64,000 nt of DNA from Eutreptiella sp. 'Long Island Sound 2002' (GCA_964036045.1 OZ038378.1:95852001-95916000), one strand, 5' to 3'. Shown: positions 9,622-54,620, counted from the first letter of the stretch. Program-made: numbers and translations. The notes: generated by a model not told the origin, from the sequence alone.

Positions 9622-10222
9622 CCTATGCATCCTCCATTGTTGCATGGCCATGGGCCGCCTCCAAATGGCTTTCATTGAGCCCCGCCTAGGGCACCTTCCC
9701 AAGGACAACGCCGTTGCCGTGCAGTGCGTGCTCTACGGGGCTTGCGCCGGCGTTCCGTTGGGGGCCTTGGCTTCGCCCTACGGAGAGGAGGCACCGGTGT
9801 TGTACCTCACATGGAAGGAGGTCAGGCCACTATTGGCCTACCCCTCAATGGACGAAGAGTGGCAATCTTTGATTGCCATGCGGGTCCTCCTCCGGGAGTT
9901 GTACTCGGATACCCCAACACGCGTCCACCTACGGGCCGCGGAGGTCGCGCGGGCGTACCGCCTGCATTGTTGCAAGGCCGGCTGCCAATCGAACTACCTC
10001 TGCTACTTGGAGTGGGATGTGACATTGGCGGTGGCGAATGCGGCGCGCCTTGGGGTTGGGTTGGCCGCGGTGTGCGGTGATGTTGTTGAGAGAGTCAACA
10101 CCATCGTCAAGCGGGCCTACAAGGACCACACAGCCCGCAAGGGGTGGGGGGGATGCCGGGGGCTAGGGCATTGGAACGGGAGGCGGAGGTGGTGTTGCAA
10201 GCATGGGAGTGTTGGTTTTTGA
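9622..10222 (+). pseudogene. 3' fragment of RAG1/Transib-like transposase, family A (copy L1)
   Basis: LCILHCCMAMGRL...YLEWDVT...GDVVERVNTIVKRAYKDHTAR; 5' part absent because of truncation at 9622. Confidence 0.7.
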
Positions 10223-10338
10223 AATTTGACCTTCCGTTAGAACACCATCGGGCACCACATATGGCCCCATGCACTATGGCCAAAGTCCCCTACCCTCTTC
10301 CTTTTCGTCCCCTCCCCTAGGTTTTGTTTCACCAATCC

Positions 10339-12440
10339 ATGGATCAAGACAGCCTCAAGGCCATCTTGGGCGACATGATGAAAGCCCAAGAAAAGCGCCT
10401 GGTGTGCTTGTGTTGATTGTTGTTTGCTTTTTGTGTCTGTTAATTTTTGGGCAGTTTCAATTAAGTTTTGCAGGTTAATATTCACGCCGGCAACTTCCAA
10501 TATTCATTAAGTTAGTTAATATTAAGTGGTTCAATATTAACCTCGCTAATATTATTTCACAATCCGAAAAATTAATATTTTTTGTTTTTTCTCCTCAGAT
10601 GTCCCACATGGAACAGTGCCTGCAAGCTGTAGCAGCTCCAACAGTTGCAACAGGTGCAGCTCCACCACCACCACCACCACCACCACCAACGAGAGCTCCC
10701 TCGCCAAGTCAAGGGGGAGAGGAGTCAAGCGACAACTCCTCTCACTGGCGGCGGGAGCGCAAGGAGAGGTAGGGAGAGAAGGAGAGGGAGGAGAAGGGAA
10801 GGAGAGAGAGAGCCAGCGTGAGAGCGAGGCTACCGGGGGGGGGTCAAGGAGGAGGAGAGTGGGGAGGTGGTGCTGGACAAGGGGGGGGGGGATGGGGTGT
10901 TGGAGGAGGGGGAGTGGGACGTGGTGGAGACCAAACCCCCCCCAACCACCCCAACAAGCTAAACCTCCCCCAATAGCTCCTAAAAGCCCTAAGGCCCACT
11001 TCCGCGGCCACCTGCAAGCCCGCACTTGTGCCGTGGTCGGCACAGGCCCTCCAAGAGGGCTGCACAAGGAATCAACCCTTGTTTGCAGGCGCGTCCCACG
11101 CGCACATGACCCTTGAGTGGGCCTTTCCACGCCTCGTGCGGTTCCAAATTCCCCGGCACGGGGAAAACAAGGGCACGTGGCGGCGGGATAGCGAACGAGG
11201 GGGCGCATGGGCCTCGCGCCCTCTGCCCGGCGAGCCCCTCAGCCCAGTGCCAGAGGGCATTAGCGTCGGGTCCTTGAGCTCGCTCAACTTATGCAGCGAC
11301 CCGCGAAGTGCGCGGTACGGTAGCGCACATTTTCACATGGCCCTCCAGCGTTGAGTCACGCTGGAATGGTGCCGCTGGTGGCGGCCGGGGAAGGGGGTGC
11401 ACTTTGCGGTCCAATGGACTGCAGTCTTGGCACCCCCGCACCCCGTATACGACCCCGCCGAACAGCACCAATACGAGGGGTCAGGGGCGGCGGCACGCGG
11501 AACACTGCCACCGCGTTCGTCAGGCGGCCGTCTCTGCCGCCGCCGCCGCCGCGCCCGCCAAACTTAATGGTGGACCCCGTGGAGGCCCCGACGGCCACGA
11601 CACACTTTAGGACACCATTGGAAGCTGTCCCATAGCAAGGAGCGCCGACTGGTTTTGAGGTATGTGTGCTTGCTTGTCGGCTAATATTTGGACTTTTGTG
11701 TTGAACTTTTGTAGGGTACCGTCTCATTTTTCGATCACCGGTGCAAAAATTGGAATAAACAGATAATATTATCTTAGAAAAAATAAAAAAAACTCGTTAT
11801 AAAAATTAAGTGTTGTGCTGTCCGTCTCGTTGCCGGTGACCGATGTTGTCATCAACGCCACGGACGCGCGGCCCGCGCGCGCGTCTTGGCGTGACGGCAA
11901 TGCGGCCAATGAGGTGCCACTCGGTCACCTCCGCCGCCTTGTCGCAGCCGACCCGCGCTTGGGGTTGGGCACCTTGAGGGGGTTGAGGGATTGCGAGCAG
12001 CGGAGGGTCTTCTCGGAGGTGTGGGTGGGTGCAACGAGGTACATGGCTGGGGAGTGGGCCAGGTTAGGGCAGATGGGGTACAGAGGGGCAGAGGATGAGG
12101 GGATATGGACAGGGATGGTTGGGGGTGATTGGGAGGGTGAGGGAGCGTTGAAAGAGGAATCCCCCCCCAAAGATCGAACCACCACCCCCCAAACCCCCAG
12201 TCACCAAAACTGGTGACAAGAAAAGCTCCAGATGGCATTTTGAGCGCGATGATTCGTCGGATGAAGCCATCCCCCCCACCGGAGGAAAGCGAGGGTCATC
12301 TAGGTGGTATACCCGAACAACCCCCAGCTCTACGAGGTGAACTGTGGCCTCCTCTTCCCCACCCCCCAAGGTGCCCAAGAACACTTGGACTGCGTTCGCA
12401 ACGGCAAGGGGAACCCCCCCCCCAGCCTTCGGATCCACCG
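10339..12440 (+). pseudogene. ORF2 of the tandem unit (copy L1): spliced gene of unknown function, Pro-rich, with a possible small C-terminal beta-barrel
   Basis: Exon MDQDSLKAILGDMMKAQEKRL (10339-10401), GT-AG intron 10402-10598, then in-frame MSHMEQCLQAVAAP. A second intron at ~11660-11835 joins GAPTGFE to VTDVVINATD; the intact TTTGCAG acceptor is visible in the copy at 43575-43581. Confidence 0.5.
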
Positions 12441-14692
12441 TGACCCTAAGATGAACCCCTTGCCGGATCCCAAGACTAACCCCGCAACAACCCCCAAGGG
12501 AGGGTTAATTTTTCAAAATTTGGGTACAAATTTGAGAGGTTGATATTAACGTCCACGACGCTTTGATTTTCAATATTTCAAATATTACAGAAAATTAACG
12601 TCACAAAAAAAACCCCAGGAGCATTTCAATATTTTTTTCCATGGTGGCAGGTGAGACCCCACCCCAACCCCCACGTAAAAATGACACCTGATCCCGTAAG
12701 GCACTGCATTGGGTTAGAGTTTGTCTCCTCCGCCCCCCCCCAATAAGGGTTAACTTTGGTTAACGCATTAATGTTTGCCCCAAATGTTAGACATATTGGG
12801 TTTAACATAGGTCTTTAGGGTGGGGGGCTCCGAGTGTCCCCATGAAGGGGACCTCAGTCCAGCACCGCTCTGTAGATAGCCTGCCCCCCTGCTTGCTTGT
12901 GCACTAGGAGCTCTTGTGATGCCCAAGGCATGGTGCGTCCGGGCCCCAAATGGCCCCTGATGCGGACGTCGCATGATCTTGCAAGATGCGCCAACCAAAC
13001 TTTTTGAGACTCCTACACCACTTGCTGGATAAACTCCGTTCCAATATTGTATGGTACAACGAACCCCATGTGCGCTAACCGCAAGGAAGTGTTGCAATGC
13101 CCACTAACTACTTGAGGACTGACATTCCCACAACGGGCTTTGAACGTGTGACGCCCTTGGCAGCACACAGGTGCTTACCCTAGTGAGCAGGCACTGCTTG
13201 TTTGGTCTGTTGGACACTTGTCAATTCCTCAAGGGACAAAATTGTTGTGAACGACAAATGTTATTACAATGTACATGAATGCCTTGTGGAACGTAGTGTT
13301 CATTCTTGTGGAAGCAGGTTTGCTGTTTTTTTTCCTTTAGTCGAAAAATTGTTGCCCACTTTTTGTTTCTATTGAGGAATGGCTAATTGTTACTTCTTCG
13401 GGGGGGCGTTGTTCGGACTGTATCACATGCAAGATTGAAAAAGAAGGACAAAAAACAAAAAAAACACGGAAAAACGCCCAAAAATAGAAAAAGCCTGCTA
13501 AATAACGGGAGAAAACGGAAAAAGCATGACTTTTGCCCGTGTGACGCGTCGATGGAACCGGTGATTAGCCCAACTTTGCACGCGATGGACCACCGTGTGG
13601 CGGTGACAGTCACTTGGAAACCTGTCCGCTGGGAGTCTGAGGCCCCGCTGTCAGTTTTCTGCCCACCATGCTCGTATTGCACCCAAACTACGATAGCCGA
13701 TTGTTATTAGGGCCACTTTTGTAGGGGCCGCGAGGCTAGTACGCAGTGGCCAACACATCTCTTACATTGTGAGGGATCACTCGGAGGGAAGCAAATAGTC
13801 TCTCCTTGAATATCAACCTCCGGGTCTCATGTATCTCAACACAGCCATCTAGTTTACCATACAATGTGTACCTGAGCAGTAGGGAAAATGGAGAGAAACA
13901 CTTTGTTGCTGCCTACGTGGAGAGGTGCCATTTGGCGCAGAATGGGGTGGCCATCCTAGCAAACTTCCTACGTTGCAACGCCAATACCATTGCCGACAAG
14001 AGACTTTACCAATGCAATGAGAAATATTTCAATGAACCATAGTAGAGCGGAATACAACAGGTATGCTGCTACGTTCCAACACCAATACCATTGCCCCCAT
14101 TAGACTGTAGAAATACAACAAGAAATATTTTCATGAACAACAGCGGAACGAATACAAGAGGTATGCTGCTAAACATCAAGCAGCACTTTGCGAAGCATGG
14201 ACCACTCTAGCAGAACGGAAGCTTTCCATGAGTGGTTCTGTACACGTGTCCCGCTCACATCCTTACGGCATCGAATGTCCTTCAGTGGTATTGGGCATGC
14301 TGCAATGGGTTGAGTAGCAACCAAAAATTGCTGGTGGTCGAGCAAGAGGCTTTTAGTTCTCCCGTTAGGTCGTGACGCAGGGATGGTCCACTCACACATG
14401 TTCAAAGGTGCAAAACGTCATCACCTATGTACATACAAAGATACTTTTGCTCGCACATTCGCACCCAGGGCGCGGGGGGGGGGGGGCAAAAAATTCTGCC
14501 CGGAGGTGAAAATCTTTTTTTGAAATGGGACATTTGTCTCCCCCCAACCCGTTTGCAAAAAAGGTTTAAGAACCCTAGAGACCTACCTTAAAATCAATAT
14601 GGTAAATTTTGATTTTTAATGTATGAAGGGATGTAAAAATTAACCTGTCAAATATTAACACGTTAACCCAATTTAGGCATATTTGCCCCGCT

Positions 14693-16639
14693 TTGCTTGT
14701 GCTCGTACATGCCCATTTGACGTGTTTGCGTGGTCAAAGGGTGCCCAACGGGTTGCTACCAAGGTTGCATAGTCCTATAGGTGGTTATGTAGCCCCACAC
14801 ATCCCTCTCCGGTCCCCCCACTCACCCTACTCCCAACCGCCTTTTTTTCCTTGTGTAGCTCTTGTTAGGCCTTTGTCTCGTGACACTCTTCTCCAGCTTA
14901 GTATCATGCTCATGCGTTTGAGTGGGGCCAAGAGTTTGCGTCACCCTTTGGTCTTTCAACTCCTTGGTGAGTGGGTGGCCTCATCCCCTTTGGCCAAGGC
15001 CCGGTGGTACCAGGCCACCGAGGTTGCCCAACTCCCAACCATCCGCAACAAACAAAGAGAGGCCGTGAAGCAATATGCATCTATCTTCTTCCCCGCACCC
15101 AAGTAGATTGGTTTACTTATGCACTTGAATGTCCCGAAGGGGGGCTTCCGGCATGTGTCGAAGTTTATGACCCGCCGGGGGGGCCACATACACCACCGCA
15201 ACGGGCCTGCCATTGGCCCGCCCCATCCCTTCACGTGACCGCTTCATGGACACAGGGAAGGAGTTGGTCAAGCCGCTTGCGCTAGATCGACCTGTGTCCG
15301 TGGCGTATCCCCCCGCAAGCGACCGCTCTTGGCGGCTGCAGTCGTCGGCCGGCTACATCGAATGGCGTCCACCCGTTGTGGACGCCATCGATTGGAAGCG
15401 GCCGATCACTTGCCTCCTCCGTGGGGATGCCTTCCCGTGCGTCGGTGGAAGATGGACCCAACTTTCCATTGGGCTCCTCAACCACGGTGCACAGGGCCGA
15501 ACACCTGCCTACGTAGGGGTGATTGGTATGGGAGTATGCGGGGACAAGGACATTGCCGCGCTAGCGACAATATGGTGCAAGAACCTACAGTTATACAGTC
15601 GTTTTGTTCTGCTATCGTTCTTGCGGTAATTTCTCCAGGTTAACACTTAATATTTCGCAAAAACTAAGGCCGATTAAAAAATTAATTTGATATTCACCTC
15701 GAAAAATTGATGCAAAAATTAATCCCCATTTGTTGGTAGGTGCTCCAATTGGGCCACAGCTGCAAGAAGTTCTATAGGGGCACCAAGTGGGTGCCCGCTA
15801 ACTTGGTCATCGCGCCCGACCAAACCTTCGTGCGACGCCTCATTGGGGTCTGCATATCGCCCATGGTAGGCTCAAATTACAATATGGATGTGTGGGGCAA
15901 GGTTGCTGTGGCGTGGGTAAAGGCGGAGGTCCGCCGCACATTAGAGGGGGAGGCGATGGCCCGTCGCCGCTATCAAGAGACGGGCCTCAGCTTGGAGACT
16001 GGGGGGTGCGTAGGAGACCCGCACGTTTTGGTGGAGCGGTGCTTGGTCTTGCTATGCATCCTCCATTGTTGCATGGCCATGGGCCGCCTCCAAGTGGCCT
16101 TCATTGAGCCCCGCCTCCGGGACCTTCCCAAGGACAACGCCGTGGCCGTACAATGCGTGCTCTACGGGCCTTGCGGCGTCCCGTTGGGGGCCTCGGCTTC
16201 GTCCGACGGAGAGGAGGCTCGGGCGTTGTACCTCAAATGGCAGGAGGTCAGGCCACTATTGGCCTACGCCCCGGAGGACGATGAGTGGAAATCGGTGGTT
16301 GCCATGCGGGTCCTCCTCCGGGAGTTGTACTCGGATACCCCAACACGCGTCCACCTACGGGCCGCGGAGGTCGCGCGGGCGTACCGCCTGCATTGTTGCA
16401 AGGCTAGCTGCCAATCGAACTTCCTCTTCTACTTGGAGTGGGATGTGACATTGGTTGTGGCGAATGCGGCGCGCCTTGGGGTTGGGTTGGCCGCGGTGTG
16501 CGGTGATGTCGTTGAGAGAGTCAACACTGTCCTCAAGCGGGCCTACAACGACCATACGGCCCGCGGGAGGGGGGGCTGCCGAGGGCTACGGCATTGGAAC
16601 GGGAGGTGGAGGTGGTGTTGCAAACGTGGGAGAGGTTGA
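14693..16639 (+). pseudogene. RAG1/Transib-like DDE transposase, family A (copy L2), with intron 15591-15739
   Basis: D1 in LLRGDAFP (15426), D2 in APDQTFVRRLIG (15818; cf. RAG1 YDEKLVREVEG), CILHCC (16055-; cf. DALHCD), E in VVERVNTVLKRAY (16514; cf. ESGNKLFRR). The upstream LIGLLMHLNVPKGGFRHV resembles the RAG1/Transib pre-catalytic helices. Lesions: stop at 15104-15106, frameshift near 15180, donor mutated GT>TT. Confidence 0.75.
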
Positions 16640-16777
16640 TTTTGAAATTTGATGTTCCGTTAGAACACCATCGGGGACCACATACAGCCCAATGCACTAT
16701 GACGAAAAGCATAGCCACCCAAAGTCCCCCACCCTATTCCTTTTCGTCCCCTCCTCTAGCTCTTGTTTCACCAATCC

Positions 16778-18880
16778 ATGGATCAAGACAGCCTGAAGGC
16801 CCTCTTGGGCGACATGATGAAAGCCCAAGAAGACCGCCTGGTGTGCTTGTTTTGCTTGTTGTTTGCAGGTCTAGCTCCACCACCACCACCACCACCACCA
16901 CCAATGAGAGTTCCCTCGCCAAGTCAAGGGGGAGAGAAGTCAAGCGACAACTCCTCTCACTAGTGGCGGGAGCGCAAGGAGAGGAAGGGAGAGAAGAAGA
17001 GGAAGAAGAAGGGAAGGAGAGAGAGAGCCAGGGTGACAGCGAGGCCAGCGGGGGGGGGGGGGTCAAGGAGGAGAGAGTGGGGAGGTGGTGGTAGACGAGG
17101 GGGGGGATGGGGTGTTGGAGGAGGCGGAGCAGGACGTGTTGGAGGCCAAACCCCCCCAACCCCCCCAACAAGTTAAACCTCACCCAATAGCTTCTAAAGG
17201 TGGCCCCTAAGGCCCACTTCCGCGGCCACCTGCAAGGCCGCAAGGGTGCCGTGCCCGGCACAGGCCCTCCAAGACGGCTGTGCAAGGAATCAACCCTTGA
17301 TTGCAGGCGCGTCCCACGCGCACATGACCCTTGAGTGGGTGTTTCCCCGCCTCGTGCGGGTCCAGATTCACCGGCACAGGGAAAACAAGGGCACCTGGCG
17401 GCGGGATAGCGAGCGAGGGGGCATGTGGGCCTCGCGCCCTTTACCCGGCGAGCCCCTCAGCCCAGTGCCAGAGGGCATTAGCGTCGGGTCCTTGAGCTCG
17501 CTCAACTTTTGCGGCGACCCGCGAAGTGTGCGGTTCGGGACCGCACATTTCCACATGGCCCTCCTGCATTGGGTCACGCTGGAATGGTGCCGCCACTGGC
17601 GGCCAGGGAAGGGGGTGCACTTTGTGGTCCAATGCGCTGCTGTCCCGGCACCCCCGCACCCCGTGTACGACCCCGCCGCACAGCACCAATACGAGAGGTC
17701 GGGGGGGCGGCACGCGGAACACCGCCACCGCGTTCGCCAAGGCGGCTCCCCCTACCATAGCCGCCCCCGCCGCGCTCGCCGAACTTAATGGCGGACCCCG
17801 TGGAGGTCCCAACGGCCACGACACACTTTCGGACACCAATGGAAGTTGTTCCATAGCAAGGAGCGCCGACTGGTTTTAAGGTATGTGTGCTTGCTTGTGG
17901 GCTAATATTTTGACTTTTTGGTTGAATTTTCGTAGGTTAACGTTTGATTTTTCGATCGCCGGCACAAAAATTGGAGTTAAGAGATAATATTAACTTAGAA
18001 AATTAAAAGATCGTCATAAAAATTAAGTGTTGTGGTGTTTGCCTCTTTGCAAGTAATGGGTGTTGTCATCGACGCCACGGACGCGCGGCCCGCACGCGCG
18101 TCTCGGCGTGACCACAATGCGGCCTATGAGGTGCCACTCGGGCACTTCACCGCTAGTCGCGGCCGACCCGCACTTGGGGTTGGGCATCTTGTGGGGGTTG
18201 AGGACTTGGGAGCACGGAAGGGTCTGCGCGGAGGTGTGGGTGGGTGCAGCGAGGTACATGGCTGGGGAGTGGGCCAGGTTAGGGCAGATCGGGTACACGG
18301 GGGCAGAGGATGAGGGGATATGGACAGGGATGGTGGGGGGTGATTGGGAGCGTGAGGAAGCGTTGAAAGCGCAGTCCCCCCCCCCCTCAAGACCAAACCA
18401 CCACCCCCTAAACCAACAGTCACCAAAACCGGTGACAAGAAAAGCTCCAGATTTGAGTGCGATGAATCGTCGGATGAAGCCATCCCCCCCCCCAAACAAG
18501 AAACGGGCCCCCCCATCCAAGCGGCCCCCGGCCACGAAGGCCACGCACGCCCCCAAGAGAAACCCCTCGCTCCCCCAAAAGGGGGGGGGGATGGTGCCGG
18601 CGACCCACTCGTCGGCACCAAGGGCCGCACCCCGCACCTCATGTACGTGGAGGTGGGCACCGTCACCGGTGTCCACCGGAGGAAAGCGAGGGTCGTCTAG
18701 GTGCAATACCCAGACTACCCCTAGCTCTACGAAGTGAACTGTGGCCTCCTCTTCCCCACCCCCCAAGGTGCCCAAGAACACTTGGACTATGTTCGCAACG
18801 GCAAGGGGAAAACCCCACCCCCCCAAGCCTTCGGGGCCAGCGTGACCCGAAGATGAACCCCTTGCTTGACCCCAAGACTA
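16778..18880 (+). pseudogene. ORF2 copy L2
   Basis: Homologous to 10339-12440. Most of intron 1 and the start of exon 2 are deleted. It retains a ~190-bp segment missing in L1 that encodes YVEVGTVTGVHRRKARVVxVQYPDYPxLYEVNCGLLF. Confidence 0.45.
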
Positions 18881-27147: not shown

Positions 27148-27429
27148 CTAATGACCCCGTGTGGAAATATCATATTATGATGCCGGAGGGACCAATGTTG
27201 TGAGTACTACATCTTTCAACAGGTGATGTCGTTGGTGTGGAATATTTTTTGTGGACGTCTTCCACAAGGGGATGCACATGGTCAACCTTCTCCACCTCAA
27301 TGTGTCATCAGAGTCAATTGCGGATAACGGCGCATGTGTGGTAGCCGATGCATCGTCAAATGCCTCAACACTTACAAACCAGCACCTAGACCTAGCATAC
27401 AACCACATCCGTCTGTGTGGGGGCGAGGG

Positions 27430-35753: not shown

Positions 35754-35856
35754 AAAAAATATTCCACACCAACGACATCACCTGTTGAAAGATGTAGTAC
35801 TCACAACATTGGTCCCTCCGGCATCATAATATGATATTTCCACACGCGGTCATTAG

Positions 35857-43115: not shown

Positions 43116-45398
43116 CGCCAGTGGCGGCCAGGGAAGGGGGTGCACTTTGTGGTCCAATGCACTGCAGTCCCGGCACCCCCGCACCCCGTATACCACCCCG
43201 CCGCACAGCACCAGTACGAGAGGTCGGGGGGGGGGGGCGGCACGCGGAACACCGCCACCGCGTTGGCCAAGGCGGGTCCCCCTACCATAGCCGCCCCCGC
43301 CGCGTTCGCCGAACTTAATGGCGGACCCCGTGAAGGCCCCGACGGCCACGACACACTTTCGGACACCAATGGAAGTTGTCCCATAGCAAGGAGCGCCGAC
43401 TGGTTTTGAGGTATGTGTCCTTGCTTGTGGGCTAATATTTTGACTTTTTGGGTGAATTTTCGTAGGTTAACGTTTGATTTTTCGATCGCCGGCACAAAAT
43501 TGGAGTTAAGAGATAATATTAACTTAGAAAATTAAAGGATCGTCATAAAAATTAAGTGTTGTGCTGTCCGCCTCTTTGCAGGTGATGGATGTTGTCATCA
43601 ACGCCACGGACGCTCGTCTCGGCGTGACCACAATGCGGCCTATGAGGTGCCACTCGGGCACTTCACCGCTAGTCGCGGCCGACCCGCACTTGGGGTCATG
43701 CATCTTGTGGGGGTTGAGGACTTGGGAGCACGGAAGGGTCTGCGCGGAGGTGTGGCCGGGTGCAGCGAGGTACATGGCTGGGGAGTGGGCCAGGTTAGGG
43801 CACATCAAGTCCACGGGGGCAGAGGATGAGGGGATATGGACAGGGATGGTGGGGGGTGATTGGGAGCGTGAGGAAGCGTTGAAAGCGCAGCCCCCCGCCC
43901 CCCCCCCAAGACCAAACCACCACCCCCCAAACCAACAGTCACCAAAACCGGTGACAAGAAAAGCTCCAAATTTGAGTGCGATGAATCGTCGGATGAAGCC
44001 ATCCCCCCCCCCAAACAAGAAACGGGCCCCCCCATCCAAGCGGCCCCCGGCCACGAAGGCCACGCACGCCCCCAAGAAAAACCCCTCGCTCTCCCAAAGG
44101 GGGGGGGGATGGTGCCGGCGACCCACTCGTCGGCACCAAGGGCCGCACCCCGCACCTCATGTACGTGGAGGTGGGCACCGTCACCGGTGTCCACCAGAGG
44201 AAAGCGAGGGTCGTCTAGGTGCAATACCCGGACTACCCCCAGCTCTACGAGGTGAACCGTGGCCTCCTCTTCCCCACCCCCCAAGGTGCCCAAGAACACT
44301 TGGACTATGTTCGCAACGGCAAGGGGAAAACCCCACACCCCCAAGCCTTCGGGGCCAGCGTGACCCGAAGATGAACCCCTTGCTTGACCCCAGGACTAAC
44401 CCCGCGACAACCCCCTGAGTAACCCCAAAGCACAAAACAATCCCACTCCTAACCTGACCCGTGACCCACCGCAACAATCGTGGGACCCCAAGACGGGGCC
44501 GCAAGAGGTGTAGCCTACAGGTGCCACCACCTGTGGTACAGGTGCTATACTGGCATGGGAGCCAGTAATGAATACCGGATATCGTTGGGAAGGTATATCG
44601 TGTGTTGTTGTGTGCTTGGAGGGAGTTTCAGGGAGGGTGGTTAGTTTTTCAAAATTTGGGTATCAATGTAACAGGTTAATATTAACGTCGGCGACACTTT
44701 GATTTTCAATGTTTCAAATATTACAGAAAAATTAAAGTCAAAACGTAAAGCCCAGGAGCATTTAATTTTTTCTCCATGGAGGCAGGTGAGACCCCACCCC
44801 AACCTGCACGTAAAAATGACACCCGATCCCGTAAGGCACTGTGTTGGGGTAGAGTTTCTCGCTTCCGCCCCCCCCACCCCAATAAGGGTCAACTTTGGGT
44901 TAGCCATTAATGTTTGCCCCAAATGTTAGACATATTGGGTTTAACATAGGTCTCTAGGGTGGGGGGCTCGGAGTGTCCCCATGCAGAGCGACCCCAGTCC
45001 AGCACCGCTCTATGGATAGCCTGCAGCCCTGCTTGCTTGTGGACTAGAAGATCTTGTGATGCCCCAGGCATCGTGCGTACAATCCCCAAACGGCCCTTGA
45101 TGCTGACCTCCCATGATCTCGCATGATACGCCAACCAAACTTTTTGAGACTCCTACACCACTTGCCGGACAAATTCCGTCGCAATTTTGTATGGTACAAC
45201 GAACCCCATGTGCGCTAGCCGCAAGGATAGTGTTGCAATGCCCGCTAACTACTTGAGGACTGACAATCCCATAACCGGCTTTGAACGTGTGACGCCCTTG
45301 GCCGCACACAGGTGCTTACCCTAGTGAACAGGCACTGCTTGTCTCGTCTGTTGGACACTTGTCAATTCCTCGAGGGACCAAATTGTTGTGAACGACAA
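43116..45398 (+). other. 2.28-kb inversion in the right arm (now a direct copy of 17591-19890), splitting ORF2
   Basis: Junctions TAATAATATTT|CGCCAGTGG at 43115/43116 and AACGACAA|GACACCATTCC at 45398/45399. The uninverted order is seen in L1, L2 and the outer right copy. Confidence 0.92.
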
Positions 45399-46352
45399 GA
45401 CACCATTCCGGCGTGACCCAATGCTGGAGGGCCACGTGGAAATGTGCGGTCCCGAACCGCACACTTCGCGGGTCGCCGCACAAGTTGAGCAAGCTCAAGG
45501 ACCCGACGCTAATGCCCTTTGGCACTGGGCTGAGGGGCTCGCCGGGGAGAGGGCGCGAGGCCCACACGCCCCCTCGCTCGCTATCCCGCCGCTAGGTGCC
45601 CTTGTTTTCCCTGTGCCGGTGAATCTAGAACCGCACGAGGCGGGGAAACACCCACTCAAGGGTCATGTGCGCGTGGGGCGTGCGTGCAATCAAGGGTTGA
45701 TTCCTTGCACAGCCCTCTTGGAGGGCGTGTGCCAGGCACGGCACCATTGCGGCCTTGCCGGTGGCCGCGGCATTGGGCCTTAGGGGCCACCTTTAGGAGC
45801 TATTGGGTGAGGTTTAACTTGTTGGGGGGGTTGGGGGGGTTTGGCCTCCACCACCTCCCGCTCCGCCTCCTCCAACACCCCATCACCCCCCTCGTCCACC
45901 ACCACCTCCCCACTCTCCTCCTCCTTGACCACCCCCCGCTGGCCTCGTTGTCACCCTGGCTCTCTCTCTCTCTCCTTCCCATTCTTCTCCCTCTTCTTCT
46001 CTCCCTTCCTCTCCTTGCGCTCCCGCCGCCAGTGAGAGGAGTTGTCGCTTGACTCCTCTCCCCCTTGACTTGGCGAGGGAACTCTGGTTGGTGGTGCTGC
46101 TGGTGGTGGTGGTGGAGCTAGACCTACAAACAACAAGCAAAACAAGCACACCACGCGGTCTTTTGGAGCTTTCATCATGTCGCCCAAAAGGGGTTTAAGG
46201 CTGTCTTGATCCATGGATTGGTGAAACAAGAGCCAGAGGAGGGGACGAAAAGGAATAGCGTGGGGGACTTTGGGTGGCCATGATTTTCGTCATAGTGCAT
46301 TGGGCCGTATGTGGTCCCCGATGGTGTTCTAACGGAACGTCAAATTTCAAAA

Positions 46353-48297
46353 TCAACCTCTCCCACGTTTGCAACACCACCTCCACCTCCCGTTCCAATG
46401 CCGTAGCCCTCGGCAGCCCCCCCTCCCGCGGGCCGTATGGTCGTTGTAGGCCCGCTTGAGGACAGTGTTGACTCTCTCAACGACATCACCGCACACCGCG
46501 CCCAACCCAACCCCAGGCCGCGCCGCATTCGCCATAGCCAATGTCACATCCCACTCCAAGTAGAAGAGGAAGTTCGATTGGCAGCCGGCCTTGCAACAAT
46601 GCAGGCGGTACGCCCGCGCGACCTCCGCGGCCCGTAGGTGGACGCGTGTTGGGGTATCCGAGTACAACTCCGGGATGAGGACCCGCATGGCAACCACCGA
46701 TTTCCACTCATCGTCCTCCGGGGCGTAGGCCAATAGCTGCCCGACCTCCTTCCATTTGAGGTACAACGTCCGGGCCTCCTCTCCGACGGGCGAAGCCGAG
46801 GCCCCCAACGGGACGCCGCAAGGCCCGTAGAGCACGCATTGTACGGCCACGGCGTTGTCCTTGGAAAGGTCCCCTGGGCGGGGCTCAATGAAGGCCACTT
46901 GGAGGCGGCCCATGGCCATGCAACAATGGAGGATTCATAGCAAGACCAAGCACCGCTCCACCACAACGTGCGGGTCCCCTACGCCACCCCCATTCTCCAA
47001 GCTGAGGCCCGTCTCTTGATAGCGGCGACGGGCCACCGCCTCCCCCTCCAATGTGCGGCGGACCTCCGCCTTCACCCACGCCACAGCAACCTTGCCCCAC
47101 ACATCCATATTGTAATTTGAGCCTACCATGGGCGATATGCAGACCCCAATGAGGCGTCGCACGAAGGGTTGGTCGGGCGCGATGACCAAGTTAGCGGGCA
47201 CCCACTTGGTGCCCCTATAGAACTCCTTGCAGCTGTGGCCCAACTCGAACACCTACCAACAAATGGGGATTAATTTTTGCATCAATTTTTTCGAGGTTGA
47301 TATTAAATTCATTTTTCAGTCCGCCTTAGTTTTTGCGAAATATTAAGTGTTAACCTGGAGAAATTACCGCAAGAACGATAGCAAAACAAAATGACTGTAT
47401 ACCTGTAGGTTCTTGCACCATATTGTCGCTAGCGCGGCAATGTCCTTGTCCCCGCATACTCCCATACCAATCACCCCTACGTAGGCAGATGTCCGGCCCT
47501 GTGCACCGTGGTTGAGGAGCCCAATGGAAAGTGGGGTCCATCTTCCACCGGCGCACGGGAAGGCATCCCCACGGAGGAGGCAAGTGATCGGCCGCTTCCA
47601 ATCGATGGCGTCCACAACGGGTGGACGCCATTCGATGTAGCCGGCCGACGATTGCAGCCGCCAAGAGCGGTCGCTTGCGGGGGGATACGCCACGGACACA
47701 GGTCGATCTAGCGCAAGCGGCTTGACCAACTCCTTCCATGTGTCCATGAAGCGGTCACGTGAAGGGATGGGGCGGGCCAATGGCAGGCCCGTTGCGGTGG
47801 TGTATGTGGCCCCCCCGGCGGCTAATAAACTTCGACGCATGCCGGAAGCCCCCCATCGGGACATTCAAGTGCATAAGTAAACCAATCTACTTGGGTGCGG
47901 GGAAGAAGATAGATGCATATTGCTTCACGGCCTCTGTTTGTTTGTTGCGGATGATTGGGAGTTGGGCAACCTCGGTGGCCTGGTACCACCGGGCCTTGGC
48001 CAAAGGGGATGAGGCCACCCACTCACCAAGGAGTTGGGAGACCAAAGGGTGCCGCAAACTCTTGGCCCCGCTCAAACGCATGAGCATCATACTAAGCTCG
48101 AGAAGAGTGTCACGAGACAAAGGCCTAACAAGAGCTACACAAGGAAAAAAAGGCGGTTGGGAGTAGGGTGAGTGGAGGGACCGGAGAGGGATGTGTGGGG
48201 CTACATAACCACCCATAGGACTATGCAACCTTGGTAGCAACCCGTTGGGCACCCTTTGACCACGCAAACACGTCAAATGGGCATGGTACGAGCACAA
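46353..48297 (-). pseudogene. Family A transposase, mirror of L2, with GT-AG intron 47253-47402
   Basis: Same motifs as L2; intact CAG|GTATAC donor and TTGGTAG|GTG acceptor; disabled near 46935 and 47887. Confidence 0.75.
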
Positions 48298-50439
48298 GCA
48301 AAGCGGGGCAAATATGCCTAAATTGGGTTAACGTGTTAATATTTGACAGGTTAATTTTTACATCCCTTCATACATTAAAAATCAAAATTGCCCCCCCCCC
48401 CCCCGCGCCTTGGGTGCGAATGTGCCAGCAAAAGTATCTTTGTATGTACATAGGTGATGACGTTTTGCACCTTTGGACATGTGTGAGTGGACCATCCCTG
48501 CGTCAGGACCTGACGGGAGAACTAAAAGCCTCTTGCACGACCACCAGCAATTTTTGGTTGCTACTCAACCCATTGCAGCATGCCCAATACCACTGAAGGA
48601 CATTCGATGCCGTAAGGATGTGAGCGGGATACGTGTACACAACCACTCATGGAAAGCTTCCGTTCTGCTAGAGTGGTCCATGGTGCGCAAAGTGCTGCTT
48701 GATGTTTAGCAGCATACCTCTTGTATTCGTTCCGCTGTTGTTCATGAAAATATTTCTTGTTGTATTTCTACAGTCTAATGGGGGCAATGGTATTGGTGTT
48801 GGAACGTAGGAGCATACCTGTTGTATTCCGCTCTACTATGGTTCATTAAAATATTTCTCATTGCATTGGTCTCTTGTGGGCAATGGTATTGGCGTTCCAA
48901 CGTAGGAAGTTTGCTAGGATGGCCACCCCCATTCTGCGCCAAATGGCACCTCTCCACGTAGACAGCAACAAAGTGTTTCTCTCCATTTTCCCTACTGCTC
49001 AGGTACAAGTTGTATGGTAAACTAGATGGCTGTGTTGAGATACATGAGACCCGGAGGTTGATATTCAAGGAGAGACTATTTGCTTCCTTCCGAGTGATCC
49101 CTCACAATGTAAGAGATGTGGTGGCCACTGCCTACTAGCCTCGCTGCCCCTACAAAAGTGGCCCCAGGAACAATCGGCTATCGTAGTTTGGGTGCAATAC
49201 GAGCATGGTGGGCAGCAAACTGACAGGGGGCTTCAGACTCCCACCAGACAGGTTTCCAAGTGACTGTCACCGCCACCCGATGGTCCATCGCGTGCAAAGT
49301 TGGGCTAATTAACGGGTTTCATCGACGCGTCACACGGGCAAAAGTCATGCTTTTTCCGTTTATCCCGTTATTCAGCAGGCTTTTTCCATTTTTGGGCGTT
49401 TTTGCGTGTTTTTTTTGTTTTTTGTCCTTCGTTTTCAATCTTGCATGTGATACAGTCTGAACAACGCCCCCCCCGAAGAAGTAACAATTAGCCATTCCTC
49501 AACAGAAACAAAAAGTGGGCAACAATTTTTCGACTAAAGGAAAAAAAACAGCAAACCTGCTTCCACAAGAATGAACACTACGTTCCACAAGGCATTCATG
49601 TACATTGTAATAACATTTGTCGTTCACAACGATTTTGTCCCTTGAGGAATTGACAAGTGTCCAACAGACCAAACAAGCAGTGCCTGCTCACCAGGGTAAG
49701 CACCTGTGTGCGGCCAAGGGCGTCAAACGTTCAAAGCCGGTTGTGGGAATGTCAGTCCTCAAGTAATTAGTGGGCATTGCAACACTATCCTTGCGGTTAG
49801 CACACATGGGGTCCGTTGTACCATACAATATTGGGACGGAATTTATCCTGCAAGTGGTGTAGGAGTCTCAAAAAGTTTGGTTGGCGCATCGTGCAAGATG
49901 ATGGGACGTCCGCATCAAGGGCCATTTGGAGCCCGGACGCACGATGTTTTGGGCATCACAAGAGCTCCTAGTGCACAAGCAAGCAGGGGGGCAGGCTATC
50001 TACAGAGCGGTGCTGCACTGAGGTCGCCCTTCATGGGGACACTCAGAGCCCCCCACCCTAAAGACCTATGTTAAACCCAATATGTCTAACATTTGGGGCA
50101 AACATTAATGCGTTAACCAAAGTTAACCCTTATTGGGGGGGGGGCGGAAGAGACAAACTCCAACCCAACGCAGTGCCTTACCGGATCAGGTGTCGTTTTT
50201 ACCTTGGGGTTGGGGTGGGGTCTCACCTGCCTCCATGGAAAAAAATATTAAAATGCTCCTGGGGTTTGATTTGTGACTTTAATTTTTTCTGCAATATTTG
50301 AAATATTGAAAATCAAAGCGTCGTGGACGTTAATATTGACCTCTCAAATTTGTACCCAAATTTTGAAAAATTAACCCTCCCTTGGGGGTTGTTGCGGGGT
50401 TAGTCTTGGGATCCGGCAAGGGGTTCATCTTCGGGTCAC

Positions 50440-52541
50440 GGTGGATCCGAGGGCGGGGGGGGGGTTCCCCTTGCCGTTGCGAACGCAGTCCAAGTGTTCT
50501 TGGGCACCTTGGGGGGTGGGGAAGAGGAGGTCACAGTTCACCTCGTAGAGCTGGGGGTTGTTCGGGTATACCACCTAGATGACCCTCGCTTTCCTCCGGT
50601 GGGGGGGATGGCTTCATCCGACGAATCATCGCGCTCAAAATGCCATCTGGAGCTTTTCTTGTCACCCGTGTTGGTGACTGGGGGTTTGGGGGGTGGTGGT
50701 TCGATCTTTTGGGGGGGGACTCCTCTTTCAACGCTCCCTCACCATTCCAATCACCCCCCACCATCCCTGTCCATATCCCCTCATCCTCTGCCCCTGTGTA
50801 CCCCATCTGCCCTAACCTGGCCCACTCCCCAGCCATGTACCTCGTTGCACCCACACCTCCGAGCAGACCCTCCGCTGCTCGCAATCCCTCAACCCCCTCA
50901 AGGTGCGCAACCCCAAGCGCGGGTCGGCTGCGACCAGGCGGCGGAGGTGCCCGAGTGGCACCTCATAGGCCGCATTGCGGTCACGCCAAGACACGCGCGC
51001 GGGCCGCGCGTCCGTGGCGTTGATGACAACATCGGTCACCGGCAACGAGACGGACAGCACAACACTTAATTTTTATGGCGAGTTTTTTTTGATTTTTCTA
51101 AGATAATATTATTTTTTTATTCCATTTTTTGCACCGTTGATCGAAAAATCAGACGGTACCCTACAAAAGTTCACCACAAAAGTCCAAATATTAGCCCACA
51201 AGCAAGCACACATACCTCAAAACCAGCCGGCGCTCCTTGCTATGGGACAGCTTCCAATGGTGTCCTAAAGTGTGTCGTGGCCGTTGGGGCCTCCACGGGG
51301 TCCACCATTCAGTTTGGCGGGCGCGGCGGCGGCGGCGGCAGAGACAGCCGCTTTGGCAAGAGCGGTTGCAGTGTTCCGCGTGCCGCCGCCCCTGACCCCT
51401 CGTATTGGTGCTGTTCGGCGGGGTCGTATACGGGCTGCGGGGGTGCCAAGACTGCAGTCCATTGGACCGCAAAGTGCACCCCCTTCCCCGGCCGCCACTG
51501 GCGGCACCATTCCAGCGTGACTCAACGCTCGAGGGCCATGTGAAAATGTGCGCTACCGTACCGCGCACTTCGCGGGTCGCTGCATAAGTTGAGCGAGCTC
51601 AGGGACCCGACGCTAATGCCCCCTGGCACTGGGCTGAGGGGCTCGCCGGGGAGAGGGCGCGAGGCCCATGCGCCCCCTCGTTCGCTATCCCGCCGCCAGG
51701 TGCCCTTGTTTTCCCTGTGCCGGCGAATTTGGAACCGCACGAGGTGGAGAAAGACCCACTCAAGGGTCATGTGCGCGTGGGACGTGCCTGCAATCAAGGG
51801 TTGATACCTTGTGCAGCCCTCTTGGAGGCCCTATGCCGACCACGGCACAAGTGCGGGCTTGCAGGTGGCCGCGGAAGTGGGCCTTAGGGCTTTTAGGAGT
51901 TATTGGGTGAGGTTTAGCTTGTTGGGAGGGTTGGGGGGGTTTGGTCTCCACCACGTCCCACTCCCCCTCCTCCAACACCCCATCCCCCCCCCCTCGTCCA
52001 CCACCACCTCCCCACTCTCCTCCTCCTTGACCCCCACCCCCCAGGGTAGCCTCGCTCTCACGCTGGCTCTCTCTCTCCTTCCCTTCTCCTCCCTCTTCTT
52101 CTCTCCCTACCTCTCCTTGCGCTCTCGCCGCCAGTGAGAGGAGTTGTCGCTTGACTCCTCTCCCCCTTGACTTGGCGAGGGAGCTCTTGTTGGTGGTGGT
52201 GGTGCTGGTGGTGGTGGAGCTGCACCTTTTGCAACTGTTGGAGCTGCTACAGCTTGCAGGCACTGTTCCATGTGGGACATCTTAGGAGAAAAAACAAAAA
52301 ATATTAATTTTTCGGATTGTGAAATATAGCATTAGCGAGGTTAATATTGAACCACTTAATATTAACTAACTTATTGAATACCTGAAGTTGCCGGCGTTAA
52401 TATTAACCTACAAAACTCAATCGAAACTGCCCAAAAATTAACGGACACAAAAAGCAAACAACAATCAAAACAAGCACACCAGGCGCTTTTCTTGGGCTTT
52501 CATCATGTCGCCCAAGATGGCCTGAGCTTGTCTTGATCCAT
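50440..52541 (-). pseudogene. ORF2, mirror of L1
   Basis: Shares L1's long intron 1 and L1's ~190-bp deletion (near 50590). Confidence 0.45.
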
Positions 52542-52699
52542 GGATTGGTGAAACAAAAGCTAGGGGAGGGGACGAAAAGGAAGAGGGTAGGGGACTTTGG
52601 GTGCCCATGATTTTGGCCATAGTGCATGGGGCCATATGTGGTGCCCCATGGTGTTGCAACAGAAGGTCAAATTTCAAAAACCACCACCCCCATGCTTGC

Positions 52700-54620
52700 A
52701 ACACCACCTCCGCCTCCCGTTCCAATGCCCTAGCCCCCGGCATCCCCCTCCCCCCCCTTGCGGGCTGTGTGGTGGTTGTAGGCCCGCTTGACGATGGTGT
52801 TGACTCTCTCAACAACATCGCCGCACACCGCGCCCAACCCAACCCCAAGCCGGGCCGCATTCGCCACCGCCAATGTCACATCCCACTCCAAGTAGCAGAG
52901 GTACTTCGATTGGCAGCCGGCCTTGCAACAATGCAGGCGGTACGCCCGCGCGACCTCCGCGGCCCGTAGGTGGACGCGTGTTGGGGTATCCGAGTACAAC
53001 TCCTGGAGGACGACCCGCATGGCAAACAAAGATTGCCACTCATCGTCCACTGGGGCGTAGGCCAATAGTGGCCTGACCTCCTTCCATGTGAGGTACAACA
53101 CCCGTGCCTCCTCTCCGTAGGGCGAAGCCGAAGCCCCCCACGGAACGCCGACACAAGCCCCGTAGAGCACGCACCGCACGGCAACGGCGTTGTCCTTGGG
53201 AAGGTGCCCTAGGCGGGGCTCAATGAAAGCCATTAGGAGGCGGCCCATGGCCATGCAACAATGGACGATGCATAGGAAGACCAAGCACCGCTCCACCACA
53301 ACGTGCGGGTCTCCTACGCACCCCCCATTCTCCAAGCTGAGGCCTGTCTGCTAATAGCATCGACCGGCCACCGCCTCCCCCTCCAATGTGCGGTGGACCT
53401 CCGCCTCCACCCACGCCTCCGCAACCTTGCCCCATACACCCATATTGTAATTTGAGCCCACCATGGGCGATATGCAGCCAAGGAGGCGTCTCACGAAGGG
53501 TTGGTCCGGCGCGATGACCAACTTAGCGGGCACCCACTTGGTGCCCCTGTAGAACTTCTTGCAGTTGTGGCCCAACTGCAACACCTACCAACAAACGGGG
53601 ATTAATTTTTGAATTAATTTTCCACGTTAATATTAAAGTATTTTTTCAGTCGGCGAAATTTCAAGTATTAACCTCGAGAAAGTACCGCAAGAACGATAGC
53701 AGAACAAAACGACTGTATACCTGTAGGTTCTTGCACCATATTTTTCCGCTAGCGCGGCCATGTCCTTGTCCCCGCATACGGCTATACCCATCACCGATAG
53801 GTATGCAGGTGTTCGGCCCCGTGCACCGTGGTTGAGGAGCCCAATGGAAAGTTGGGTCCATCCTCCACCGGCGCACGGGTAGGCATCCCCACGGAGGAGG
53901 AAAGTGATCGGCCCCTCCCAGGCGTTGGAGTCAACAAGGGGTGGACGCCATTGGATGTAGCAGGCCCACGATTGCAGCGGCCAAGAGCGGCCGCTTGCGA
54001 GGGGATCCGCCACGGACATGGGCCGATCTAGCGCAAGCGGCTGGACCAACTTCTTCAATGTGTCCATGACGCGGTCACGTGAAGGGATGGGGCGGGCCAA
54101 TGGCAGGCCCGTTGCGGTGGTGTACGTGGCCCCCCCGGCGGGTCATAAACTTCGACACATGCCGGAAGCCCCCCTTCGGGACATTCAAGTGCATAAGTAA
54201 ACCGATCAACTCGGGTGCGGGGAAGTGGATAGATGCATATTGCTTCACGGCCTCTTTTGGTTCGTTGCGGATGGTTGGGAGTTGGGCAACCTCGGTGGCG
54301 TGGTACCACCGGGCCTTGGCCAAAGGGGATGAGGCCACCCACTCACCAAGGAGTTGGGAGACCAAAGGGTGCCGCAAACACTTGGCCCCACTCAAACGCA
54401 TGAGCATCATACTAAACCCGAGAAGAGTGTCACGCGACAAAGGCCTAACAAGAGCTACACAAGGAAAAAAGGCGGTTGGGAGTAGGGTGAGTGGGGGGAC
54501 CGGAGAGGGATGTGTGGGGCTACATAACCACCCATAGGACTATGCAACCTTGGTAGCAACCCGTTGGGCACCCTTTGACCACACAAACACGTCAAATGGG
54601 CATGGTACGAGCACAAGCAA
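52700..54620 (-). pseudogene. Family A transposase, outer right copy, with GT-AG intron 53585-53720
   Basis: ORFs 54075-54440, 53633-54100, 53351-53584 and 52730-53335 tile the same protein (LLRGDAYP, APDQPFVRRLLG, CIVHCC, VVERVN), with frameshifts and stops. Confidence 0.75.

What the first reader, a model, noticed from the sequence alone, without database searches (positions are those of the whole stretch)
9622..53276. ~43.7-kb aged palindrome with only a ~400-bp spacer
Seen: two ~21.6-kb arms in inverted orientation, separated by 31307-31708. They are about 93-98% identical by eye and differ by indels and one inversion. Copy-specific deletions are mirrored, so the tandem duplication predates the fold-back. 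Established: long palindromes with short spacers are unstable and arise by fold-back or breakage-fusion-bridge. Inference: this one has persisted long enough to diverge by several percent, which is unusual.
Basis: partly seen in the sequence, partly recalled or inferred. Interest (0 to 1): 0.8.

Follow-up and report, generated by a model that had tools for sequence, protein, structure and literature searches.

The report
Twin aged palindromes, one rearrangement
The 43.7-kb palindrome is real and old, but it is one half of a pair of touching palindromes in gene-free repeat DNA of a large protist genome, most likely left by one break repaired by copying both flanks backwards, which is a known kind of rearrangement.

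Summary
Arms 9622-31306 and 31709-53276 are inverted copies with 3.65% substitutions, 53 indels and one 2.3-kb inversion.

An assembly artefact is unlikely:
- Derived changes split evenly between the arms (37 vs 32).
- CpG-context sites differ 2.8 times more often than other sites.
- The substitution spectrum matches that of older local paralogues.
- The 174 kb examined contains no N.

The finding is incomplete. A second palindrome, P1, has 6.3-kb arms and about 3.2% divergence. It abuts the left arm at 9619/9622 through a non-homologous junction with a 2-bp filler. Both outer ends of the middle block are truncated copies of repeats that are intact at the far ends. Other copies of an old repeat family show the original order. 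Both centres lie in one array of 194-bp repeats.

The best reading is one break or fork collapse in that array, two fold-back (template-switch) copies of 6.3 and 21.7 kb, and one end-join.

The "400-bp spacer" is a nested 232-bp palindrome with an 8-nt loop plus a one-sided 171-bp segment.

None of the 34 longest reading frames tested has a Pfam domain.

The scan had already noted a younger single palindrome 48 Mb away; I confirmed it (99.6% identity). This is an ordinary kind of rearrangement in an unusually legible example.

The parts
1..6637 (.). In-window part of an 11.2-kb transposon with terminal inverted repeats (C1:95847409-95858637). It was inserted into the right arm of the neighbouring palindrome P1 after the duplication.
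   Evidence: 28-bp perfect terminal inverted repeats and a 5-bp target duplication ATAGG; the empty site is in the partner arm. Many copies at 95-97% identity genome-wide.
6638..9619 (+). Outer 3 kb of the right arm (W) of palindrome P1. Its inverted partner lies at C1:95836796-95839779, left of the window.
   Evidence: 96.1% identity on the minus strand, 3.86% substitutions. Homology ends at 9619, whereas the partner's outer end lies inside an old repeat that runs on in other copies.
9620..9621 (.). Junction J1 between the two derived inverted copies (W | A), with a 2-bp filler GG and no homology.
   Evidence: Junction alignment against both partner arms.
9622..31306 (+). Left arm (A) of the reported palindrome. 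It is the derived copy, at least at its outer end.
   Evidence: Its outermost copy of transposon family A is cut at 9622, while the partner copy runs on past 53276.
17591..19890 (+). Segment in the canonical orientation; its partner in the right arm is inverted.
   Evidence: Direct match to 43116-45398 at 94.2%. It is colinear with the other units and with genome-wide copies.
30940..32075 (.). Array of ~194-bp 'U' repeats that holds the palindrome centre. Orientation map: U- U- | nested palindrome | U- | 15-bp linker | U+ U+.
   Evidence: The family is dispersed genome-wide (110 matches).
31306..31537 (.). Nested 232-bp palindrome: 94% identity, axis 31421.5, 8-nt loop at 31418-31425 flanked by a 7-bp inverted repeat. 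This is the true fold-back point of the large palindrome, or a pre-existing fragile hairpin.
31538..31708 (.). 171-bp stretch present only on the right of the axis. The left arm skips it through a junction with 1-bp microhomology at 31306.
31709..53276 (-). Right arm (A'), which keeps the ancestral context at its outer end.
   Evidence: The family-A copy and the tandem array run on to 56477.
43116..45398 (.). 2.3-kb inversion derived in the right arm after the duplication, with blunt breakpoints.
53277..56477 (-). Continuation of the ~6.4-kb tandem array (5' part of a family-A copy plus a 'B' unit). It has no mirror partner.
   Evidence: 87-90% identity to the other units only.

Best explanation
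The reported palindrome (P2) is a real, old inverted duplication. It is one half of a twin palindrome.

**Today's order.** L - W' - c1 - [W | A] - c2 - A' - R.
- W'/W are the 6.3-kb arms of a neighbouring palindrome, P1. W' lies left of the window at C1:95836796-95843119. W lies at C1:95844071-95847408 plus window 6638-9619.
- A/A' are the 21.7-kb arms of P2.

**Ancestral order.** The locus originally read W' - (0.5-kb non-U segment) - (array of 194-bp U repeats) - A'.

**Proposed event.** One break or collapsed replication fork occurred inside the U array. On each side, DNA synthesis turned back and copied its own flank in reverse (fold-back priming or template switching). This ran 6.3 kb to the left, with a 950-bp loop, and 21.7 kb to the right, with an 8-nt loop and an early 171-bp skip. 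The two new ends were then joined without homology at 9619/9622, with a 2-bp filler.

**Later changes.**
- Each arm accumulated about 1.8% substitutions.
- An 11.2-kb transposon entered W.
- A 2.3-kb piece of A' inverted.
- Small indels arose.
- Divergence is lower near both axes, which suggests some arm-to-arm gene conversion.

The DNA is decayed repeats with no recognisable gene, so the structure is a neutral scar and not a functional device.

**Shown:** the anatomy, the polarity of the copies, the ancestral order, the equal age of the two palindromes and the equal ageing of both arms.

**Inferred:** that it was a single event, and its enzymology.
For: 1. **Both outer ends of block [W A] are truncated copies.** The partner of W ends inside an old repeat that is continuous in at least five other genomic copies. 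The partner of A ends inside a family-A transposon copy that continues colinearly to 54708. J1 at 9619/9622 has no homology and a GG filler.
2. **Ancestral order.** In at least five other copies of an old repeat family, the inner end of A (up to 30936) is followed, in the same orientation, first by the non-U part of c1 and then by the start of W. These copies are continuous across the c1|W boundary but not across W'|c1. Here that order can be restored only by joining the P2 centre to the P1 centre.
3. **Same age.** P1 has 203 substitutions in 6311 sites (3.2%) and P2 has 784 in 21499 (3.65%), z about 1.7. Both are less diverged near the axis: P1 2.64% against 3.86%; P2 2.39% in the inner 5.4 kb against 4.07% outside.
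4. **Real ageing.**
   - Derived changes polarised with outgroup repeat copies: 37 in the left arm, 32 in the right.
   - CpG-context sites differ at 8.5%, other sites at 3.0%.
   - The substitution spectrum is the same as in the 11%-diverged tandem units.
   - A transposon with a target-site duplication sits in one arm only.
5. **Same repeat array.** Both centres lie in the same U-repeat array. The two turn-back points fall at U positions of about 113-120 and about 89.
6. **Precedent.**
   - Fold-back loops of 766-70,466 bp with 2-8 bp of microhomology occur in human inverted duplications (PMC3907307).
   - Inverted repeats of 5-9 bp with 3-12 bp spacers drive palindromic duplication in yeast (PMC7999016).
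   - Fold-back synthesis at one break end joined to the other end by end-joining is documented at the 5-34 bp scale (PMC11724301).
   - Linked inverted duplications ('local n-jumps') occur in cancer genomes (PMC7025897).
Against: - No reads, other strains or an unrearranged allele were available, so a single event is an inference from geometry and equal divergence.
- The agreement in U phase (within about 24-30 of 194 positions) would arise by chance roughly 3 times in 10, and whole U units could have been lost.
- The c1 spacer lies in the orientation expected for a switch to the lagging-strand template. A plain fold-back of a broken end would additionally need a later flip of the spacer by recombination between the arms.
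- The nested 232-bp palindrome is slightly more diverged (7 differences in 116 positions) than the adjoining arms (2.8%). It may therefore predate the event and be its trigger, not its product.
- The lower divergence near the axes could reflect local mutation-rate differences instead of conversion. The longest identical run (313 bp) only just reaches the 99th percentile of the simulation.
Confidence: 0.68

Rival explanations
1. Two separate fold-back duplications. P2 formed first, with longer arms. A later break next to it produced P1 and trimmed the left arm of P2 back to 9622.
For: Each palindrome on its own looks like a standard fold-back product. The trimming scenario removes the need for a coincidence at 9619/9622. 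The genome makes single palindromes elsewhere.
Against: P1 is not younger than P2 (3.2% against 3.65%, with the same inner-to-outer gradient). Both centres lie in what was one U array, and the repeat-family order shows the two derived copies together make exactly one reversed copy of the ancestral segment. That is automatic for one event and a coincidence for two.
Confidence: 0.15
2. A tandem duplication of the ~29-kb ancestral segment, followed by inversion of the middle piece between the two copies of the U array.
For: J1, read on the other strand, is exactly a tandem-duplication junction (end of A' joined to start of W'). The U array contains repeats in both orientations that could mediate an inversion.
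Against: An inversion between the two array copies predicts the same spacer in both palindromes, or spacer-less palindromes, and two copies of the 0.5-kb non-U segment. Instead, the spacers differ (950 bp against 402 bp), share only 71-82% family-level similarity, and the non-U segment is present once.
Confidence: 0.07
3. Classical breakage-fusion-bridge: sister-chromatid fusion, a dicentric bridge and a second break.
For: Fold-back junctions are the hallmark of this process (PMC7025897). The structure could arise if both products of a break fused with their sisters, broke again 6.3 and 21.7 kb away, and were rejoined.
Against: Every segment is present exactly twice, with no copy-number ladder. 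The structure is interstitial at 95.9 Mb of a 201-Mb sequence, with ancestral context on both sides. The model requires retention and rejoining of an acentric fragment.
Confidence: 0.05
4. An assembly artefact: a chimeric fold-back read, or two haplotypes or paralogous copies joined head to head.
For: No read data could be examined. The centre is rich in inverted repeats, where assemblers can switch strand.
Against: The arms differ by 3.65%, with an even split of derived changes, CpG-biased substitutions and the local natural spectrum. One arm has an inversion, and the twin's arm has a transposon insertion with a target-site duplication. Three independent false joins would be needed. There is no N in 174 kb and no third copy elsewhere in the assembly.
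Confidence: 0.04

Closest known systems
Fold-back inverted duplications with a single-copy spacer (human constitutional cases, PMC3907307; yeast fold-back priming at breaks near short inverted repeats, PMC10622511 and the work summarised in PMC7999016)
   Same: Inverted copies lie next to the original and are separated by a short single-copy loop (950 bp in P1; 8 nt, or 402 bp if the nested palindrome is counted, in P2). A tiny inverted repeat sits at the P2 axis.
   Different: Those cases give a hairpin-capped end, a dicentric chromosome and a terminal deletion or translocation. Here both sides of the break carry a fold-back copy of limited length, the two are rejoined, and the chromosome stays intact.
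Templated inverted duplications at repaired double-strand breaks in yeast (PMC11724301)
   Same: Same topology and logic: fold-back synthesis primed by microhomology at a break end, with the end then captured by end-joining.
   Different: The scale differs: mostly 5-34 bp there, 6.3 and 21.7 kb here. Here both ends copied back, whereas the hybrid mechanism proposed there has synthesis at one end.
Replicative 'copy-and-paste' complex rearrangements: local n-jumps and linked inverted duplications in cancer genomes (PMC7025897); FoSTeS/MMBIR-type template switching (own knowledge)
   Same: Three to four clustered junctions lie on one derivative, with copy-number gain 2-1-2, a mix of inverted and tandem-type junctions, and 0-2 bp of homology or filler.
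   Different: This one is fixed in a germ line or clonal lineage of a protist and is old enough to have diverged by 3.6%. The ancestral order could be rebuilt from repeat-family copies instead of a reference genome.
Large palindromes of primate X and Y chromosomes (own knowledge: Skaletsky 2003, Rozen 2003, Jackson 2021)
   Same: Arms of tens of kilobases with short spacers persist over long times. There is a hint of arm-to-arm conversion.
   Different: Those arms are over 99.9% identical through frequent gene conversion and carry expressed genes. Here the arms are 96% identical and hold only decayed repeats.
P-nucleotide and hairpin footprints of hAT/Transib/RAG-type cleavage (own knowledge)
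   Same: Same order of parts: flank, inverted copy of that flank, junction, inverted copy of the other flank, other flank.
   Different: Footprints are a few nucleotides long. No transposase domain was found in the arms, and no excised element is identified.

Membership tests
Fold-back inverted duplication | An inverted copy directly next to the original, separated by a short single-copy spacer | tested here: met
   P2 arms meet at 31306/31709. P1 arms meet across a 950-bp spacer. The spacers are single-copy at high identity.
Fold-back inverted duplication | Short inverted microhomology at the turn-back point | tested here: inconclusive
   The P2 axis has a 7-bp inverted repeat around an 8-nt loop. 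It is part of the palindrome itself, so its pre-existence cannot be shown. At P1 the ancestral partner sequence is lost.
Fold-back inverted duplication | Resolution through a dicentric, with terminal deletion, translocation or ring | tested here: not met
   The structure is interstitial. Ancestral repeat context continues beyond both outer ends.
Breakage-fusion-bridge amplification | Repeated cycles giving a ladder of more than two inverted copies of the same segments | tested here: not met
   Every arm segment has exactly two high-identity copies in the assembly. No further inverted blocks lie within about 50-60 kb on either side of the window.
Replicative template-switch rearrangement (local n-jump) | Several clustered junctions on one derivative, with copy gain and mixed inverted and non-inverted junction types | tested here: met
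   Two head-to-head or tail-to-tail junctions, one tandem-type junction (J1) and a 171-bp skip lie within 46 kb of ancestral sequence. Copy number is 2-1-2.
Replicative template-switch rearrangement (local n-jump) | Microhomology or short insertions at junctions | tested here: met
   J1 has a 2-bp filler, and the 171-bp skip has 1-bp microhomology.
Conversion-maintained ampliconic palindrome (sex-chromosome type) | Arm-to-arm identity near 99.9% or higher | tested here: not met
   3.65% substitutions overall and 2.4% in the inner 5.4 kb.
Conversion-maintained ampliconic palindrome (sex-chromosome type) | Arms carry functional genes | tested here: not met
   No Pfam family at E<=0.1 (E<=0.01) in the 34 longest reading frames tested, which lie in both palindromes apart from two in the flanking transposon. 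No Rfam family in the window. Spliced genes with short exons could still be missed.
Assembly fold-back artefact | Arms nearly identical, or differences that look like errors concentrated in one arm | tested here: not met
   37 against 32 derived changes, CpG bias, natural spectrum, arm-specific inversion and transposon insertion.
Assembly fold-back artefact | No reads spanning the axis and junctions; arm depth equal to single-copy depth | not testable with these tools
   No read data available.

The most novel reading that the evidence does not exclude
The twin palindrome is the kilobase-scale footprint of a two-ended hairpin or fold-back repair pathway that is unusually active in this euglenid lineage. 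One cause could be hairpin-forming transposase cleavage in the U-repeat array. Another could be weak hairpin opening by the Mre11/CtIP-type machinery. On this reading, palindromes of different ages across the genome (99.6% and 96% seen on this chromosome) record a lineage-specific mode of break repair and a steady source of segmental duplication.
Probability: 0.1. Interest if true: 0.6.

Novelty: new member of a known kind. Interest (0 to 1): 0.33.

Why it matters
The structure has no sign of function, so its value is as a natural record. All junctions survive, and dispersed copies of an old repeat family give the pre-event order. The full path of a complex rearrangement can therefore be read from one sequence: a break in a short-repeat array, copying back on both sides, an early template skip, and a blunt join.

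It shows that fold-back copying of 6-22 kb at both sides of one lesion can be resolved without losing a chromosome arm. It also shows that the product can survive long enough to diverge by several percent.

For annotators of this genome, it warns that apparent simple palindromes may be parts of larger linked events.

Tried and rejected
- **Rfam.** Scan of the window found nothing.
- **Pfam.** 34 long reading frames tested (all but two in P1 or P2) gave nothing. I did not run the large protein searches, because the claim here does not rest on them.
- **The whole palindrome as a transposon or a pair of insertions.** Rejected. The arms are a mosaic of several unrelated repeat families plus locus-specific sequence, in mirrored order, and each arm stretch tested is present only twice at high identity.
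- **Tandem duplication plus inversion between the two array copies.** Rejected as the main model because the spacers differ and the non-U segment is single.
- **U-repeat phase continuity as proof of a single break.** Only weakly informative; chance is about 0.3.
- **A mirror copy of the left flank beyond the right arm**, which would indicate a larger interrupted palindrome or a haplotype fold-back. None found on the right. Its copy lies on the left and defines P1.
- **A twin next to the other known palindrome at C1:47.95 Mb.** None found. That one is single and young.
- **Literature on Euglena palindromes.** Nothing specific found. The published E. gracilis assembly (2.37 Gb, 46 chromosomes; PMC11252322) does not match the layout of this assembly (2.28 Gb, largest sequence 201 Mb). 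I could not name the assembly or its read type, and I take the 'Euglena' identity from earlier scan notes only.
- **Human origin.** The sequence is not human, given the genome size and repeat content, so that operator rule did not apply.
Full report
**Setting.** The window is C1:95852001-95916000 of a 2.28-Gb assembly in 2317 sequences. Earlier scan notes call it a Euglena/euglenid genome; I did not verify the species. The published E. gracilis assembly has a different layout. The window is about 53% G+C, has few long reading frames and no Rfam match. It is not human. Coordinates left of the window are given as C1 positions.

- The repeat finder, BLAST and MAFFT show a left arm at 9622-31306 and a right arm at 31709-53276.
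- The outer 8 kb and the inner 11.4 kb are mirror images.
- 17591-19890 and 43116-45398 are in direct orientation, so one 2.3-kb piece is inverted in one arm.
- Substitution divergence is 4.02% (outer), 4.23% (inverted piece) and 3.27% (inner).
- Overall there are 784 substitutions in 21,499 sites plus 53 indels.
- The arms contain ~6.4-kb tandem units that differ by 10.6-11.7% from each other but only about 4% from their mirror partners.

**What the arms are made of.**
- Each unit is a copy of an abundant ~4.7-kb repeat (family A; more than 2000 first-look candidates, 75-89% identity) plus a 1.7-kb stretch 'B' that occurs only at this locus.
- The inner arm holds an old repeat at about 72% identity, an abundant 430-bp repeat, an abundant 805-bp repeat and remnants of a further old family.
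- At high identity every stretch of the arms has exactly two copies in the assembly: itself and its mirror.
- None of the 34 longest reading frames tested has a Pfam match; all but two lie in this palindrome or its neighbour.
- This is repeat-derived, apparently non-coding DNA.

**It is not an assembly artefact.**
- I polarised arm differences with outgroup copies of three repeat families. 37 changes are derived in the left arm and 32 in the right.
- CpG-context sites differ at 8.5%, other sites at 3.0%.
- The substitution spectrum, including a transition/transversion ratio near 1.1 and about 20% C<->G changes, is the same as between the much older tandem units and in the neighbouring palindrome.
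- One arm carries an inversion. The neighbouring palindrome carries an 11.2-kb transposon with a target-site duplication in one arm only.
- There is no N in 174 kb.
- Read-level proof was not available.

**The structure is larger than reported.**
- Window 6638-9619, directly left of the left arm, has an inverted copy at C1:95836796-95839779 (96.1% identity).
- Next to that copy, C1:95839776-95843120 is the inverted copy of C1:95844071-95847408 (96.7% identity).
- The 11.2 kb between the two right-hand pieces (C1:95847409 to window 6637) is a transposon. It has 28-bp perfect terminal inverted repeats and a 5-bp target duplication, and the empty site is in the partner arm.
- Without that transposon there is a second palindrome, P1. 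It has 6.3-kb arms (W' on the left, W on the right) and a 950-bp spacer c1.
- The right arm of P1 ends at 9619, two bases before the left arm A of the reported palindrome P2 begins.
- The layout is therefore W' - c1 - [W | A] - c2 - A'.

**Which copies are derived.**
- The outer end of A' (53276) lies inside a family-A copy that runs on colinearly to 54708, as in many other genomic copies. The mirror copy in A is cut at 9622.
- The outer end of W' lies inside an old repeat that is continuous across that point in at least five other copies. W is cut at 9619.
- The middle block [W | A] therefore consists of two truncated inverted copies.
- They are joined at J1 with no homology and a GG filler.

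**The ancestral order.**
- The non-U half of c1 (C1:95843541-95844069) belongs to an old repeat family.
- In at least five other copies of that family, the sequence matching the inner end of A (up to window 30936) comes first.
- After 77 bp to about 1 kb, and in the same orientation, comes the sequence matching this half of c1.
- That then runs without a break into the sequence matching the start of W.
- There is no continuity across the W'|c1 boundary.
- The ancestral locus therefore read W' - non-U segment - U array - A'.
- The two derived pieces together make exactly one reversed copy of it, cut within the U array and placed in swapped order.
- The non-U segment now exists only once, in the reversed orientation.

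**The centres.**
- Both centres lie in arrays of a ~194-bp repeat (U) that is dispersed in the genome.
- In P2 the orientation map is U- U- | 31306-31537 | U- | 15-bp linker | U+ U+.
- 31306-31537 is itself a palindrome: 94% identity, axis 31421.5, 8-nt loop.
- The left arm equals the reverse complement of 31422-53276 with 31538-31708 (171 bp) skipped at a junction with 1-bp microhomology.
- P2 can therefore be read in two ways. It may be an almost spacer-less fold-back with an early 171-bp template skip. Or, if the nested palindrome is older, it is a fold-back with a 402-bp loop next to a fragile hairpin.
- An old quasi-palindrome of U copies (81% identity, axis 31706.5) was already present.
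- The P1 turn-back point lies at U position of about 113-120 and the P2 axis at about 89. These are close in phase, but that is only weakly significant.

**Age.**
- P1 is 3.2% diverged and P2 3.65% (z about 1.7).
- Both are less diverged near their axes: 2.64% against 3.86% in P1, and 2.39% against 4.07% in P2.
- Equal age and equal gradients fit one event followed by some arm-to-arm conversion near the centres. Local rate variation is not excluded.
- I give no absolute date, because no mutation rate is known to me for this organism.

**Mechanism.**
- The best-supported reading is one lesion in the U array, with synthesis turning back on both sides: 6.3 kb leftward and 21.7 kb rightward.
- A non-homologous join (J1) then linked the two new ends.
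- A fork-based version (switch to the lagging-strand template, then two further switches) gives today's orientation of c1 directly.
- A broken-end version (both ends prime on themselves) needs a later flip of the spacer by recombination between the arms.
- Each step has precedent:
  - Fold-back loops of 766-70,466 bp with short microhomology (PMC3907307).
  - Very short inverted repeats driving palindromic duplication in yeast, through polymerase-delta-dependent fold-back synthesis (PMC7999016; PMC10622511).
  - Fold-back synthesis at one end captured by end-joining at the other, at the 5-34 bp scale (PMC11724301).
  - Linked inverted duplications in cancer genomes (PMC7025897).
- Rivals are two sequential fold-backs, tandem duplication plus inversion, classical breakage-fusion-bridge, and artefact. 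The evidence against each is set out in the Rival explanations section.

**How unusual is persistence?**
- At birth the centre was close to a perfect palindrome, which model organisms tolerate poorly. The one-sided 171-bp segment limits hairpin or cruciform growth to 116 bp.
- Inverted repeats with spacers of 50-300 bp are stable in wild-type yeast and do not stall eukaryotic forks (PMC7999016).
- The same chromosome carries a single palindrome with 10.4-kb arms at 99.6% identity, 48 Mb away (first noted by the scan as s1-195231).
- Earlier notes list further kilobase-scale palindromes.
- Palindrome formation and survival seem routine in this genome.

**Verdict.** This is a real, aged, gene-free inverted duplication of a known mechanistic kind. 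The new information is that it is half of a twin whose full rearrangement path can be reconstructed. Interest is modest.

Noticed in passing
window 1-6637 (element C1:95847409-95858637): An 11.2-kb DNA transposon with 28-bp perfect terminal inverted repeats and a 5-bp target duplication (ATAGG). It belongs to a young, abundant family whose copies are 95-97% identical. Earlier notes place a ParB/Srx-methyltransferase-like gene inside it.
   Followed up: partly
window 56597-64000 and L032 (C1:95916001-95926000): A 15.4-kb composite satellite: 82-bp units from 57338 to about 66561, then 47-bp units to about 72708. It is about 70% G+C with strong strand skew and is bracketed by 739-bp direct repeats (56597-57335 and 73037-73771, 96.5% identity), like an element whose interior became a satellite.
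   Followed up: partly
arms of both palindromes and the tandem units (window 9622-53276; C1:95836796-95847408): C<->G transversions make up 15-23% of all substitutions and the transition/transversion ratio is only about 1.1. This holds in young and old paralogue pairs alike. CpG-context sites change 2.8 times faster than other sites.
   Followed up: partly
window 30940-32075; C1:95843122-95843541; dispersed: The ~194-bp 'U' repeat family occurs genome-wide as short arrays, often with copies in both orientations. Two local palindrome centres lie in such arrays.
   Followed up: partly
   Followed up: partly
window 14485-14600 vs 48390: A 116-bp stretch is present only in the left arm. It lies next to a region that forms 101-bp tandem repeats in the right-hand units (48707-48907, 55145-55345).
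   Followed up: no
L046-L053 (C1:47939001-47959863): A single palindrome with 10.4-kb arms at 99.57% identity, much younger than the one studied here and without an abutting twin.
   Followed up: partly
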